Assembly (NCBI RefSeq): GCF_021869535.1
Contig: NW_026262712.1
Coordinates: forward strand, 70,680,001 to 70,744,000
Origin: Mytilus californianus
Taxonomy: Eukaryota
Length of the DNA: 64,000 nt
Direction of reading: 5' to 3'
In this document: piece by piece, positions 54,565 through 61,267 of the stretch
How the letters are laid out: each line of letters starts with the position of its first letter
Position numbering within the stretch: the first letter of the stretch is position 1
Notes under the pieces: model-generated
Told to the model about the DNA's origin: nothing
Database searches by the model: none
What the model saw: the letters and a program-made list of their open reading frames with translations, nothing else
Position numbers and translations under genes: made by a program

Positions 54565-54628
54565 TGTCAGAAGTGGGATTCGAACCCACGCCTGGAGAAC
54601 CAGACTGCGACCTGAACGCAGCGCCTTA
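54565..54628 (-). pseudogene. trnL: 3' 64 nt of a tRNA-Leu(CAG) gene (orphan half left by the retrotransposon insertion)
   Basis: Identical to the 3' part of the array tRNA from TAAGGCG through ACTTCTGACA; lacks the 5' 20 nt and the T5 terminator. Confidence 0.92.
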
Positions 54629-55850
54629 TTTTTATCATTAATAAAATGTTTATTACATATTTACATACTGTCACCATGAGACATTCCTCTTTGGTGAGAA
54701 TTTTTCTATTTACAGAGTTGTTAGTAGTTATCCTCCTACATTATTAAAAAAATAAAATACATCTAGATGATACACGTTAAAAACTTTAAAAGGAAATTAT
54801 AACATATTTGTCCCAATTTATTTTATAATGATTCATTTTTCAAAAAGTGTATATGCCCTTTATAGCTTACTTTTCGGTTTGAGCCAAGGCTCCGTGTTGA
54901 AGACCGTACTGTGACCTATAATGGTTTACTTTTATAAATTTTGACTTGGATGGAGAGTTGTCTCATTGGCACTCATACCACATCTTCTTATATCTATATA
55001 TGAATTGTAACAGGACAAATTCAATATAAGATATATATTGAAAGCGAGACAACTCTTTTTTATTTTTACAAAAATCGAACACACCTAAATGCGATCGATA
55101 ATTTTACATTGGAATGCGATCCTTTGTTCTATCAACCAATCAAATGAAAGTAACTGTCTAGACAAAAAACTATGTAGTCATTTTGAATATCTAATAAAGT
55201 GTTATTGTGTAAAAAATATTTATAGAATAATTGTCTTTGTTGTGTCATTTTATAATACGTGTATGCGTATTCAATGTATTTTTTAATTGTGTACTTGAAT
55301 AAACGAAGTGCATCAATATCTTTGTCATGAAAAACTTTTAAATTCCGTGTTTTGAATATGCATAGTCGGGCTACACTGAGGAAAAAAATAAGAAAATAAG
55401 TATTAATAACTAGTGTACGTTTCAAAAACCTAAGTAAAAAAGAACTGTTCATAATCATTAGAATTAACCATGTCAGGTGGGTAATTAATAAAAATGTTGA
55501 GTACTAGTAATATGTCCTTCAGGTAATCATGAATTGTTTGAGCTTTTGACAAAGTACAAACAGGTGACTAAGATTTTCTGTACCCTGGCCGCACGTTTTG
55601 CATGTGCCAGTATCTGTCTAACCTATTCTGACCAGTTTTTCGAGTGCAAAATTGCTCGATGGACAATCCTATAGTTTAAGCAATGACAATCAGGGGGTAA
55701 ACCACTTTGATTGACAACTGAATAAAGACTTTTGAAATTGAGAGACGGATATCGCTCCGCCCAATGCTTTTCAGCAGAGGGCGTTTCAAAAAATTTTGAC
55801 AGAAGGCTGTAAAATAAATTCGTCACAGCACTTCTAAGGTGAATTTCTTT

Positions 55851-56001
55851 GGCTGTGTTTGGATATACGCCTAAGGCAGCCTATGGTTACCCATAGGTAT
55901 CTTTGGGTACCAATGGTTTGATATTTTGATATATAGAATATCAAACGAAAGGTACCTATGGATAACCATAGGCCACCTCTGGCGTATATCCAAACACAGC
56001 C
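55851..56001. mobile_element. 151-bp MITE inserted into the Tx1-like ORF2 with a 3-bp (TTT) target duplication
   Basis: TTT at 55848-55850 and 56002-56004; removing the insert restores the reading DNDK-EIHL. Confidence 0.88.
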
Positions 56002-57020: not shown

Positions 57021-60000
57021 TTCTTGCAATACACACAATACAGTGACTAAGCAATCATTATGAACTACTTTTCATAGGATGGAAGTCATTGAATATGCTG
57101 ATATAATCAATAATAAAGAATAGTCCATTTATATTTATAAGGAAAGGTATTACATGAAAAGTGCTTACCATGGTGAGGTACAGAAAATATATATATATAT
57201 ACGGTGATTATCACCAAGGTTGAAATTTATTTTCTGAAGTAAAGGAAGACAATGTGTACCCCATTGTTAAATTTACATTGCATTTCAGATTAAAACAGAT
57301 ATCTTGAGATTGACTGTATGTTACCATAGTTTACAAATAAAATTAATATATCATATTATCCATATAAAGTGCGTTTTATAATTATGCCACAATATCTATT
57401 ATCATCAACCATGCCAAAATATATGCTTGGTATATCCAATATGTAATTTCACAGATACACACATATACTATGTGCAAGTTAATTATATCAAAGTAACAGT
57501 CATACAAATTGCCCTTAACCGTCAAAATGTACTGAGATTTAACACCAGCATTCATCTATGCACGATAAGTTCAACAGGAGTATTCTACATAGTTTTATGC
57601 TTCCAAATCAAAAGTTTATATAAAAGAAAGAAGTCAAAGGTTTCCCATCATAGTTTAGTTACATACATTTTTTTTGTACCTGAGGTCATTGAATATAGAT
57701 CATTATACAAATAAGGAGATATGGTATGATTGCCAATTAAACGACTATCATCCATGATTACTAGTAACAAACCACATTTGCAAAGTTGAATAAAATACAG
57801 TTGATACCTGGTATTTATTCCTAAAAAGAAAATGCCCAACTATATTAAACCGTATTTGACTATAAACAGGGTACAAACTGGACATAATGCACTAGTTCAT
57901 AAACAAGTTAGAACAATCACCTTCATATAATGCTCAGAATATGACATTCATGAAACTTGTTCAATATCATTAGAGAACTCTAAATCTTAAATACTGGAAG
58001 CCACCTCTCATAAGTACACTGTACTATGCAAGATAATGATATAACTGGACTAAAATTACACACAACCTGAAATTAACTGCCTTTACAGCGCTTTCGCGCT
58101 TTGATTCAATCTAAAGTATGAAGTCAAAAATCCATTACATTTAACTGAACTAAAAATGTTTGTGTAAAATATTTTTATCCAGTTTTTGAATTTATTACCA
58201 AATCCAAATTTGTCTAAAACTGCAAACAGATACTCGTGTCCAGCTCTGTCAAATACTTTTTCTTTGATCTAATTTTAATAAATAACATTCTATATCATCC
58301 ATTTCTACTAAATCCATAATATCCCTCACACTAGCAACTGTATCAGAGATATCTTTTCCTAAGATACAACAGCTTTGATTTGGTGAAATAACTTTTGGAA
58401 GTACATAATTAAATCTATTTGCCATAACTCTTGCAAGTATTTTGTAATCAACATTCAACAAGCTAATTGACCTAAAGTTTTTCAAATCTGATTTATCACC
58501 TTTGTTTTTTAATATTATATTTATATTCCCATATCTCATAGCTCTAGATAATTCCTCATTTTCCACAATACTTTGATAAATATAGAGTAATACGTGTTTT
58601 AATTCATTAAAAAAAAAAAAAAAAATTCTGCAGTTATACCATCTGGTCCAGGTGTTTTCCCTTTTTTCATACCTTTTAAGGATTTTTCAATTTCCTCAAT
58701 ATTAATTTCATCATCACACATTTCTACATCCTCATCATCAATTTTGACATTAACATTATTCAATAATTCATCAACTGAATGCATATCAATACTAACACAA
58801 GAAAACAAATGTTTATAATAATCATGTATAACATCTAGTAGATCATTTTTTTCTGTGACAATTTTCCCATCACAATCTTTTATTTCACTTATCACATTCT
58901 TATTCTGTTAATACTTTTCTAATTTCAAAAAAATATGCAGTATTTCTATCACTTTCTAGAGCCCACTGACTTGTATCTCAAAATTGCACCTTTACATTTG
59001 TATGTTTCAATATCTTCTAATTGTGTTTTCAATTCTAAAAATTGTTCACTATTTATCTGAATACCATTTGCAGATTTTACTGTTAATTCTTGAATTTTAT
59101 TCTGCAATTTATAATATTCCCTGTTTAAATCTTTTTGCTTTTCTTTGCCATAGATTTGGCATAATCTTTTAATCGTAAATTTTAAATTATCCCACCAAAT
59201 TAAAGGATTTGACATATAAAGATCTGACCCAATTTCCTCTGCAAATAGTCTCTTTATTTTATCAGTAAATAATTCATCTTGTAAAAATGAATTATTAAAA
59301 ATTCCACACACCTGGACCTCTTTCTACATTACAAAAATCTACTTTCATGCTGACAATATTATGATCACTAAAACTAGTATCTTTATAATGAATATTCTTA
59401 ATACTTGATTTTAAATCTATTGAAACAAGAAAATAGTCTATTCTGCTTTGGGTTAAAAACCCTTTTACAACCTGTTTTCTAGAAAAAACTTTTGTATTAA
59501 TATTTCTATTTCTCCATATATCATATAAATCTTTTTCTTGCATAAAATTACATAAGGATTTTACAGCCTTATCATTACAATGTAGGGTTTTCCCACTCTT
59601 GTCTAAACTGGATAAAGTAGTATTAAAATCTCCAGCAACTAATACATATTTTCATTTACTAATTTTATTTTTACACTTTAAGAAAAACTCATATCTTTCA
59701 TTTACATTATTTGGTGCATATATATTATAAATGTCAATTAATTTATCATTAATTGTCCCTTTTATATGAATAAATCTTCCATTATCATTTTCCACTTCTA
59801 AAAAAATATTTTTTAATTTCTTACTAACAAGAATAGCAACACCTTGTCTGTTATTACCACTATTACTAAAAAAAAACATCTCCATCCCAAATAGTTTTAT
59901 CTCTTTTAATTCTTTCTACAAACAAACCATTCCAGAATGTTTCTTGTAAACATATAATATCATAAAATCACAATGAAAAAATACAATTCCTTTTTATTAT

Positions 60001-61212
60001 AATCACAAAGTCCGTTACAATTAAGACTTATAACATTAAACATAGCCATCACTATATAAAATATATTGAGTATTATATAATATTTACAATCCATTTTTAT
60101 TTGTTTTTATTTTTTTTCTGATGAGCCAACATTAACATCTGCCTTTACATTAACCTTAACTTTCAATGTTTTTCGTCTTTCTTTTTTTAAAACACATTTT
60201 TGCATTTTTCATCTACACTAGCCCACTGACTTTCTTCAGTCAATGGGTCAGTGTCCATAGTAATTTCGTCTAATTCACCACAAACACCATCATCTCCACC
60301 CTGGCTGCATGTTTGTTCCAGAAAGGGAATGATACTCATTTTTTCATCATTAACAGTAGTTTCACATGAAACATTTTCATTTGTTAGTTCATTTGTACTT
60401 AACAATAAATTACATTTACTAATATTGCTAACAGTTAAAAAACATGTCCATCTGAAATCTGCTCACTGTCTTTATCTGTCATCTCAGTCGCGATCTTTGT
60501 CTTTTCACCATTGTCGGTCGCGATCTTTGACTTTTCATCATTGTCTGTCGCGATCTTTGTCTTTTCACCATTGTCGGACGCGTTATCAACGGTTTCTGTA
60601 ACATCATCCTCCATTGATTCATCAGCGTCGGTAAATTCATCCTCATTATCTTCATCTCCATTACCAATACCATCACCTTCATTACCATCACCAATTTCTC
60701 CATTACCATCATCAACGTCTCCATTACCATTACCTCTATAATCATCAGCGTCTTCCCTATTACCATCCTCACCATTAGATTCCACATATCACACATGTTA
60801 CTACTTGTGTGTATATCTGCCACAACTTTTATGACCTTTGACTTTATCACATGATCACTGGTTCCCTGTTCCGAACAAATGACTGAGGAATTAATATCTG
60901 ACGTATCTACACTAACCAGATCATTTTCATGTTCACTTTCTTTTAATTCTGCATTGTTTTCTTCAAAACTGGTGTTAATTTCTTGATATTTTCTTTTATT
61001 GTCAGAAACACTACCCCAGGGTGTTTTTCTTTTTCCTGCGGGTATTTCACCGAATCCTTCTCCAAAATACCGCTTTCATGTGAGACAATCACAATCATTT
61101 TTTGTCCGGCGTAGGCAACTCCTACATTTATTCTCTGAACAGTTTTTACTTATATGTCCCTGTTGACAGCATTTAAAACATTTAAATTCTGGACAATCTC
61201 TATATAAATGTG

Positions 61213-61267
61213 GGAGAACCAGACTGCGACCTAAACGCAGCGCCTTAGACCACTCGGCCATCCTGAC
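61213..61267 (-). pseudogene. trnL: 5' 55 nt of a tRNA-Leu gene, truncated by the retrotransposon (anticodon reads TAG here)
   Basis: GTCAGGATGGCCGAGTGGTCTAAGGCGCTGCGTTTAGGTCGCAGTCTGGTTCTCC, then element sequence; sits exactly one 404-bp period from the next array copy. Confidence 0.92.

What the first reader, a model, noticed from the sequence alone, without database searches (positions are those of the whole stretch)
54565..61267. Candidate tRNA-Leu-targeting Tx1-like retrotransposon inserted inside the tRNA gene with a 35-bp target duplication
Seen: the terminal tRNA-Leu gene is split into a 5' part (61267-61213) and a 3' part (54628-54565). The same 35 nt (TAAGGCGCTGCGTTYAGGTCGCAGTCTGGTTCTCC; 54594-54628 and 61213-61247) flank a co-oriented 6.6-kb element with zinc-knuckle ORF1, APE-RT ORF2 and an A-rich tail. 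The 3' junction is in the D-loop and the 5' junction is in the variable arm. Known: the Tx1 clade includes site-specific families for multicopy RNA genes (Dewa in tRNA-array spacers, Mutsu in 5S rDNA, Keno in U2). Inference: a family that cuts within the tRNA-Leu coding sequence itself and uses the tandem array as a safe harbour. I cannot tell whether it has been described in molluscs.
Basis: partly seen in the sequence, partly recalled or inferred. Interest (0 to 1): 0.85.

Follow-up and report, generated by a model that had tools for sequence, protein, structure and literature searches.

The report
Dead composite of tRNA-gene-targeting LINEs
A mussel tRNA-Leu gene is split by the broken, fused remains of two related jumping genes whose families insert at one fixed spot inside tRNA genes of nearly every type, not only tRNA-Leu.

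Summary
The split tRNA-Leu(CAG) gene and its 35-nt duplication are real. The 6.6-kb insert is not one element.

It consists of:
- 3.1 kb of LINE family A, 5'-truncated in ORF1;
- an unrelated 1.47-kb high-copy retroposon;
- about 0.1 kb of unassigned sequence;
- 1.9 kb of LINE family B, carrying two small nested insertions.

A and B share only 42% of residues in the C-terminal half of ORF2. The composite has many frame breaks, lacks the RT catalytic core, and is duplicated 14.4 kb away.

Genome-wide, 30 of 38 family-B 3' ends abut the 3' part of a tRNA or tRNA-like sequence. These cover 12 isoacceptor types. The junction lies 1-3 nt after G18G19 in the D-loop and is always co-oriented with the tRNA. 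Family A and at least four further Mytilus families use the same site. Usual target duplications are 12-15 bp.

The clade has APE-RT-zf-RVT and a CCHC ORF1. It groups beside a fish lineage that sits in 5S rDNA (Mutsu-like), which fits Tx1.

The tRNA targeting is therefore supported, tRNA-Leu specificity is refuted, and a single 35-bp-TSD event is unproven. This scan had already noted the same system on another piece of this genome (tRNA-Lys array).

The parts
61213..61267 (-). 5' part of tRNA-Leu (gene nt 1-55). It is the last unit of the 404-bp array and its anticodon reads TAG instead of CAG.
   Evidence: in phase with the array found
58107..61212 (-). LINE family A segment. It is 5'-truncated about 750 bp into the element, within ORF1 at the CCHC knuckles. 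It runs through APE and stops in mid-RT (ORF2 aa ~674), before the catalytic xADD motif. It is about 93% identical to other A copies and has at least 9 frame breaks.
56633..58106 (-). Unrelated 1.47-kb A-tailed interspersed repeat (X). It is high-copy (4674 first-look candidates), co-oriented, and sits exactly between the A and B segments.
56551..56632 (.). About 80-110 bp of unassigned filler between X and family B, with no similarity to the ORF2 of A or B
54629..56550 (-). LINE family B segment: the C-terminal third of ORF2 plus the 3' UTR, ending ...TTATTAATGATAAAAA. It is about 90-91% identical to other B copies. It is interrupted by a palindromic MITE-like insert (55849-56005) and a 141-bp repeat (54856-54996).
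54565..54628 (-). 3' part of tRNA-Leu(CAG), gene nt 21-84, followed by 6 nt of array trailer and then foreign DNA
54594..54628 (-). 3' copy of the 35-nt duplicated tRNA segment (nt 21-55); the 5' copy is at 61213-61247
61587..64000 (-). Intact tRNA-Leu(CAG) array units with a 404-bp period. The array continues about 3.5 kb past the window end, then the whole composite recurs.

Best explanation
The locus is a dead, rearranged relic left by tRNA-gene-targeting LINEs of the L1/Tx1 group.

Shown:
- Both outer junctions are canonical for these families.
- The 3' junction joins family B's conserved A-rich end to tRNA nt 21, two nucleotides after G18G19 of the D-loop. This is the site used by B, by A and by at least four sister families in tRNA genes of many isotypes, always in the tRNA's orientation.
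- The 5' junction joins a 5'-truncated family-A copy to tRNA nt 55 in the variable arm.
- The interior is A, then an unrelated retroposon, then filler, then B. It has no RT catalytic core.

Inferred mechanism:
- The APE endonuclease nicks the antisense strand of the tRNA gene at the D-loop/D-stem boundary (sense-strand context ...TGGTY|ARRGC).
- The exposed T-rich 3' end primes reverse transcription on the A-tail.
- The second strand is usually cut 12-15 bp downstream in the anticodon loop, giving a 12-15-bp duplication. It is sometimes cut further away (35 bp here) or with loss of target.
- Multicopy tRNA arrays serve as a safe harbour.

Inferred history:
- B and A inserted separately into the same or neighbouring tRNA-Leu units.
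- A later deletion or recombination involving repeat X fused them.
- The block was then copied by a 14.4-kb segmental duplication.
For: Composite structure:
- blastn and tblastn against other copies split the insert into A (about 93% nt) and B (about 90% nt). Repeat X and the filler lie between them.
- A and B share 42% aa over 719 residues.

Targeting:
- I tabulated all 38 exact matches to B's terminal 19-mer; the control gave 1+1 matches. 21 abut recognised tRNA genes of 12 isoacceptor types, 9 abut tRNA-like B-box-bearing sequences, and 8 abut other DNA.
- In the 30 fetched loci the junction falls at gene position 20-24 in all but one of the recognised tRNA flanks.
- Different tail lengths and junction offsets within one array show independent events.
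- Family A sits in Thr-TGT (15-bp duplication), Leu-TAA (13 bp), Tyr and Ala.
- 5'-truncated B copies have 12-15-bp duplications.
- In M. edulis, P0046 sits at this site in tRNA-Gly. In ENA metagenome contigs, P0041 (Lys), P0043 (Phe) and P0073 (Lys) sit at the same site. P0033 (M. edulis) sits in tRNA-His at about nt 10.

Family placement:
- Pfam finds Exo_endo_phos, RVT_1, zf-RVT and an ORF1 zf-CCHC.
- The best solved relative is human L1 ORF2p, E = 1e-88.
- The tree places all tRNA-targeting families in one 35-row clade beside the clade of Danio BAC82613. A close relative in that clade sits in 5S rDNA.
Against: - The order of events is not shown. The duplicated 35 nt differ at only one base, which would also fit a single event.
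- 8 of 38 B ends are not next to tRNA-like DNA, so the specificity is strong but not absolute.
- 9 of the flanks counted as tRNA-like are not recognised by ARAGORN or Rfam.
- Tx1 placement rests on one unlabelled fish relative and its 5S rDNA context, not on a tree with named reference elements.
Confidence: 0.75

Rival explanations
1. One 6.6-kb tRNA-Leu-specific Tx1-like element inserted once and made a 35-bp target duplication.
For: The two 35-nt copies are near-identical, and the outer junctions are co-oriented and LINE-like.
Against: The insert is built from two families that are 42% identical, plus an unrelated repeat between them. The families sit in at least 14 isoacceptor types. Clean copies have 12-15-bp duplications.
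Confidence: 0.05
2. This is a single retrotransposition of a chimeric template. Reverse transcription began on family-B RNA, switched to repeat-X RNA and then to family-A RNA, or it copied a transcript of an already composite locus. The 35 nt would then be a true target duplication.
For: The flanking repeat is clean, with one mismatch. X is co-oriented and A-tailed, with a few bases of microhomology at the A/X joint. Template-switch chimeras are known for L1-type enzymes (general knowledge).
Against: The model needs three switches plus about 100 bp of unexplained filler. No second copy of the mosaic exists apart from the 14.4-kb segmental duplicate.
Confidence: 0.15
3. Target choice comes from tethering to the RNA polymerase III machinery on tRNA genes (TFIIIC/TFIIIB), as for Ty3 or Dictyostelium TRE elements. 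It would not come from sequence-specific cutting by the endonuclease.
For: The isotype range is broad and little sequence is shared beyond the A-box region. The neighbouring lineage targets 5S rDNA, another Pol III gene with an internal promoter.
Against: The junctions are nucleotide-precise, inside the gene, in one orientation and beside the most conserved A-box bases. Insertions also occur in sequences that ARAGORN and Rfam do not accept as tRNAs. Endonucleases of the Tx1 clade are reported to be sequence-specific (cited in PMC8869645).
Confidence: 0.2
4. These are chance insertions into an abundant tandem array, with no real specificity.
For: tRNA arrays are large in this genome.
Against: 30 of 38 B ends sit at one position of tRNA or tRNA-like sequence and always in one orientation. 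tRNA genes are a tiny fraction of the 1.65 Gb.
Confidence: 0.01

Closest known systems
Mutsu (5S rRNA gene-specific Tx1-clade LINE of zebrafish; Kojima and Fujiwara 2004, as cited in PMC3706591)
   Same: Both have the APE-RT-zf-RVT ORF2 and a CCHC ORF1. Both insert at a fixed site inside a multicopy Pol III gene, co-oriented, with an A-tail. The fish clade holding BAC82613 and a 5S-rDNA-resident relative is the neighbour of the mussel clade in my tree.
   Different: The target here is tRNA genes of many isotypes rather than one gene family. ORF2 identity is about 33%.
Dewa (Tx1-clade LINE of zebrafish)
   Same: It is a Tx1-type element associated with tRNA-Leu arrays.
   Different: Dewa is reported in the spacer of tRNA-Leu (PMC3706591). 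The mussel families cut inside the coding sequence and are not limited to Leu.
NeSL-1_TV, LIN15_SM, LIN25_SM (tRNA-Pro, tRNA-Arg and tRNA-Glu gene-specific non-LTR elements; PMC4640811)
   Same: They are non-LTR retrotransposons inserted inside tRNA genes.
   Different: Those encode a restriction-like endonuclease, belong to the NeSL group, and each is tied to one isotype. These encode an APE-type endonuclease and use a site shared by most tRNAs.
Dada DNA transposons (PMC3706591, PMC8869645)
   Same: They insert at specific sites inside tRNA and snRNA genes and follow the same safe-harbour logic.
   Different: Dada elements are DDE cut-and-paste transposons with 6-7-bp duplications, and each family uses one gene type.
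Dictyostelium TRE5-A/TRE3 and yeast Ty3/Ty1
   Same: They target tRNA genes of all isotypes.
   Different: They integrate upstream or downstream of the gene through Pol III factors (PMC3706591, PMC3159450), not within the coding sequence.

Membership tests
L1/Tx1 group of non-LTR retrotransposons | ORF2 with an N-terminal APE endonuclease, a central RT and a C-terminal Cys-rich (zf-RVT) domain | tested here: met
   Pfam finds Exo_endo_phos, RVT_1 and zf-RVT on an open family-A ORF2. Human L1 ORF2p is the best solved relative, E = 1e-88 over residues 24-890.
Tx1 clade | RT phylogeny groups the element with Tx1-clade references rather than with L1 proper | tested here: inconclusive
   No labelled reference set was available. 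The nearest named relative is Danio BAC82613 (33% identity, 99% coverage, 770 bits, versus 301 bits for human L1). Its close relative P0093 sits in 5S rDNA, as described for Mutsu. Bivalve surveys list Tx1 as the only L1-group clade (PMC10294476).
Tx1 clade | ORF1 with CCHC zinc knuckles, and sequence-specific insertion into repeated targets | tested here: met
   zf-CCHC is found in ORF1 (also visible in the window).
   Family B sits in 12 isoacceptor types in the census, plus tRNA-like sequences. Family A sits in Thr, Tyr, Leu-TAA and Ala.
Single TPRT insertion with target-site duplication | One continuous element of one family between the two copies of the duplicated target | tested here: not met
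   The order is family A, repeat X, filler, family B.
Site-specific LINE (general) | The endonuclease cleaves the target sequence in vitro | not testable with these tools
   This needs a biochemical nicking assay.

The most novel reading that the evidence does not exclude
An old, diversified Tx1-clade lineage has specialised on a structural position common to nearly all tRNA genes, the D-loop/D-stem boundary just after the A-box G18G19. It comprises at least 8 families that are about 40% divergent in ORF2, and it is present in several Mytilus species. This would be the first APE-type LINE lineage specific to tRNA genes of all types. It lies next to the 5S rDNA-specific Mutsu lineage, which suggests an ancestral specialisation on Pol III genes with internal promoters. 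I found no description of it in the searchable literature, but I could not check Repbase.
Probability: 0.5. Interest if true: 0.75.

Novelty: new variant of a known kind. Interest (0 to 1): 0.6.

Why it matters
Site-specific LINEs are models for how a retrotransposon endonuclease reads DNA, and they are candidate tools for targeted gene insertion.

A lineage that hits one conserved position inside tRNA genes of almost any isotype differs from both known kinds of tRNA-associated element. One kind is isotype-specific: the RLE elements, Dada and Dewa. The other is tethered to the gene's flanks: Ty3 and TRE.

It would offer a natural experiment on how a degenerate motif is recognised. It would also show how tRNA arrays tolerate, and perhaps expand under, repeated disruption.

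The particular copy in this window is only a dead, rearranged relic.

Tried and rejected
- Copy number. The figure of more than 1000 copies suggested was an artefact of a nested high-copy repeat in my query. The exact-tail census gives about 40 B copies.
- Fetching more genome loci.
- Rfam and ARAGORN on the 10 unrecognised flanks among the 30 fetched loci (9 of them in the 38-site census) gave no tRNA call. I therefore call them only tRNA-like.
- Pfam on the ORF just downstream of the tRNA 3' part (53922-54389) found nothing. One Pfam call failed because the frame contained stop codons.
- Relatives outside the tRNA-targeting set. The Patella relative and the 32%-identity relative P0097 are not in tRNA genes. 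The P0027 copy lies in the spacer of a tRNA array.
- Literature. Searches for an APE-type LINE inside tRNA genes found none. The name of BAC82613 could not be recovered from papers.
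Full report
**Observation**

ARAGORN finds six intact tRNA-Leu(CAG) genes on the minus strand from 61587 onward. Tandem Repeats Finder reports a 404-bp array running from 61213 to the window end. In phase with that array, a 55-nt 5' part of the gene lies at 61267-61213. A 64-nt 3' part lies at 54628-54565.

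The 35 nt at 54594-54628 and 61213-61247 are the same segment of the gene (nt 21-55). They differ only at the first anticodon base, C versus T. The pattern has no chance expectation in the window. The physical observation therefore holds.

**What lies between the halves**

No ORF in the insert exceeds 123 aa. A three-frame read shows CCHC zinc-knuckle sequence starting right at the 5' junction, then APE and RT fragments in shifting frames.

Searching the window's own genome with the 5' end of the insert found only nine other places. All of them continue upstream into more ORF1 sequence. The window copy is therefore 5'-truncated, about 750 bp into its element.

Those copies define family A. It is about 5.9 kb long and starts GACTTCCGG. 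ORF1 carries a zf-CCHC domain, and ORF2 is about 1300 aa with Exo_endo_phos, RVT_1 and zf-RVT.

Family A aligns to the window only from 61212 down to about 58107, which is ORF2 residue ~674. This stops before the catalytic xADD motif.

The last 1.9 kb of the insert (56550-54629) belongs to a different family, B. Its ORF2 C-terminal half is only 42% identical to A over 719 residues.

Between the two segments sits a 1.47-kb A-tailed interspersed repeat, X. It has thousands of first-look matches genome-wide. About 80-110 bp of unassigned sequence follows it.

Family B's segment also carries a palindromic 157-bp insert and a 141-bp repeat.

The whole block, together with the array, recurs 14,417 bp further along the chromosome at 99.96% identity.

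**Target specificity**

The query for family B's 3' end excluded all tRNA letters. Even so, in all 30 fetched loci the conserved end (...TTATTAATGATAAAAA plus 0-25 further A) is followed by the 3' part of a tRNA or a tRNA-like sequence, always in the tRNA's orientation.

Aligning the flanks to intact tRNA genes found in the same loci puts the first retained base at gene position 20-24. This is 1-3 nt after the invariant G18G19. One exception lies in the anticodon loop.

The sense-strand context is ...TGGTY|ARRGC.

My first impression of more than 1000 copies was wrong. It came from the nested repeat in the query.

An exact search for B's terminal 19-mer gives 38 sites, against 1+1 for the reversed control. 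Reading all 38 flanks gives:
- 21 in recognised tRNA genes of 12 isoacceptor types: Gln-CTG, Phe, Ser-AGA, Pro, Tyr, Lys, Leu-TAA, Leu-CAG, Thr-AGT, Ile-AAT, Val-AAC and Asp. Gln-TTG is seen only in L023, outside the census.
- 9 in B-box-bearing tRNA-like sequences that ARAGORN and Rfam do not accept.
- 8 elsewhere.

Different tail lengths and 1-3-nt offsets within single arrays show independent events. Examples are three insertions in one tRNA-Thr array and three in tRNA-Leu(CAG), counting L015 and C132:70822920.

**Family A and target duplications**

Family A behaves the same way:
- tRNA-Thr(TGT), with a 15-bp duplication;
- tRNA-Leu(TAA), with 13 bp;
- tRNA-Tyr, with about 1 kb of target lost;
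- tRNA-Ala.

5'-truncated B copies have duplications of 12-15 bp that end in the anticodon loop. The 35 nt seen in the window is thus longer than usual.

I did not test that claim.

**Breadth and placement**

A protein search with family A's ORF2 returned many Mytilus proteins at 40-97% identity.

| Family | Source | Position of the copy examined |
|---|---|---|
| P0046 | M. edulis assembly | tRNA-Gly, same site |
| P0033 | M. edulis assembly | tRNA-His, about nt 10 |
| P0027 | M. edulis assembly | spacer of a tRNA array |
| P0041 | ENA metagenome contig | tRNA-Lys, D-loop site |
| P0043 | ENA metagenome contig | tRNA-Phe, D-loop site |
| P0073 | ENA metagenome contig | tRNA-Lys, D-loop site |
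| Patella relative, 37% identity | Patella assembly | not in a tRNA gene |
| P0097, 32% identity | metagenome contig | not in a tRNA gene |

A quick ML tree of 50 ORF2 proteins puts every tRNA-targeting family in one 35-row clade (SH-aLRT 82), whose core is a 24-row clade (SH-aLRT 98). Its neighbour is a 5-row clade holding Danio BAC82613.

A close relative in that fish clade, P0093, lies in tandem inside 5S rRNA genes (Rfam RF00001, E = 3e-12). This matches what the literature calls Mutsu, the 5S-specific Tx1-clade element of zebrafish (PMC3706591).

Human L1 ORF2p is the best solved relative.

**Mechanism and history**

The junction anatomy fits target-primed reverse transcription (inferred):
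- The endonuclease nicks the antisense strand at the D-loop/D-stem boundary.
- The T-rich 3' end primes on the A-tail.
- The second strand is usually cut 12-15 bp downstream.

This is inferred from anatomy and from what is established for L1/Tx1 elements. Nothing here shows enzymatic activity.

For this locus, the most economical history is two insertions, B and A, into the same or adjacent tRNA-Leu units. A later deletion or recombination at repeat X would have fused them, and segmental duplication followed.

A single insertion of a template-switched chimera remains possible. It needs three switches and leaves the filler unexplained.

Mismatched flanks do occur in this clade. One otherwise intact element has a tRNA-Gly 5' flank and a tRNA-Lys 3' flank.

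**Comparison with the known**

| Known element | Reported behaviour | Source |
|---|---|---|
| Dewa | sits in the tRNA-Leu spacer | PMC3706591 |
| NeSL-1_TV, LIN15_SM, LIN25_SM | restriction-like-endonuclease elements, each tied to one tRNA isotype | PMC4640811 |
| Dada | DNA transposon | PMC3706591, PMC8869645 |
| TRE and Ty elements | integrate beside tRNA genes through Pol III factors | PMC3706591, PMC3159450 |

Six literature searches found no APE-type LINE that cuts inside tRNA genes irrespective of isotype. Repbase could not be consulted. I therefore rate the system a new variant of a known kind. The window's copy itself is an ordinary dead relic.

**Limits**

Noticed in passing
window 54500-64000 and G000:C132:70744001-70764000 (L051, L052): A 14,417-bp segmental duplication repeats the composite insert, its downstream 1.3 kb and a stretch of tRNA-Leu array at 99.96% identity. 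About 15 array units lie between the copies and at least 20 lie beyond the second copy.
   Followed up: partly
window 53249-54558: Foreign DNA starts 6 nt after the tRNA 3' end. In the duplicate copy it is a clean insertion of about 1.33 kb into the array spacer, with a short ATTG-type duplication. In the window it runs on into non-array sequence. Its 155-aa ORF (53922-54389) has no Pfam match, although a YIGET-like motif at about 54465-54485 hints at a GIY-YIG nuclease remnant.
   Followed up: partly
window 56633-58106: Repeat X is a 1.47-kb interspersed element with an A-rich tail and thousands of first-look matches across all chromosomes. Its family is not identified.
   Followed up: partly
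window 55849-56005 and 54856-54996: Two small nested insertions sit in the family-B segment. One is palindromic over its whole length (MITE-like). The other has 99%-identical copies on contig C1 and a CATATA-type duplication.
   Followed up: no
L068 (ENA contig), 5' flank about 175-243 and 3' flank about 6386-6440: An element with both ORFs open has the 5' part of tRNA-Gly(GCC) upstream and the 3' part of tRNA-Lys(CTT) downstream. Its two flanks come from different tRNA genes.
   Followed up: no
G000:C99, 45.9-71.7 Mb (L004, L005, L007, L010, L016, L024 and C99:71696052): Family B hit one tRNA-like unit seven times at the same junction. The unit starts AAGGCTCTCGC and has a GGTTCGAAT box about 50 nt on. 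Neither ARAGORN nor Rfam calls it a tRNA.
   Followed up: partly
G000, at least 15 sites, e.g. C2:63288057, C121:27681966, C154:45959270: Short matches to only the last ~45 nt of family A's tail are preceded by a different 3' UTR. Many are followed by a SINE-head-like sequence (GTAGTCGAACTACTG...GAGTTCGAATC). This may be another family, or a non-autonomous passenger, that shares A's tail and target habit.
   Followed up: partly
L072 (aquatic metagenome contig), 3916-4450: Two tandem Mutsu-like LINE copies are separated by a 5S rRNA gene split at about nt 20-27. They are close relatives of Danio BAC82613.
   Followed up: yes
window 61233: The one difference between the 35-nt copies turns the anticodon CAG into TAG in the dead 5' half. 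Both segmental duplicates carry it.
   Followed up: no
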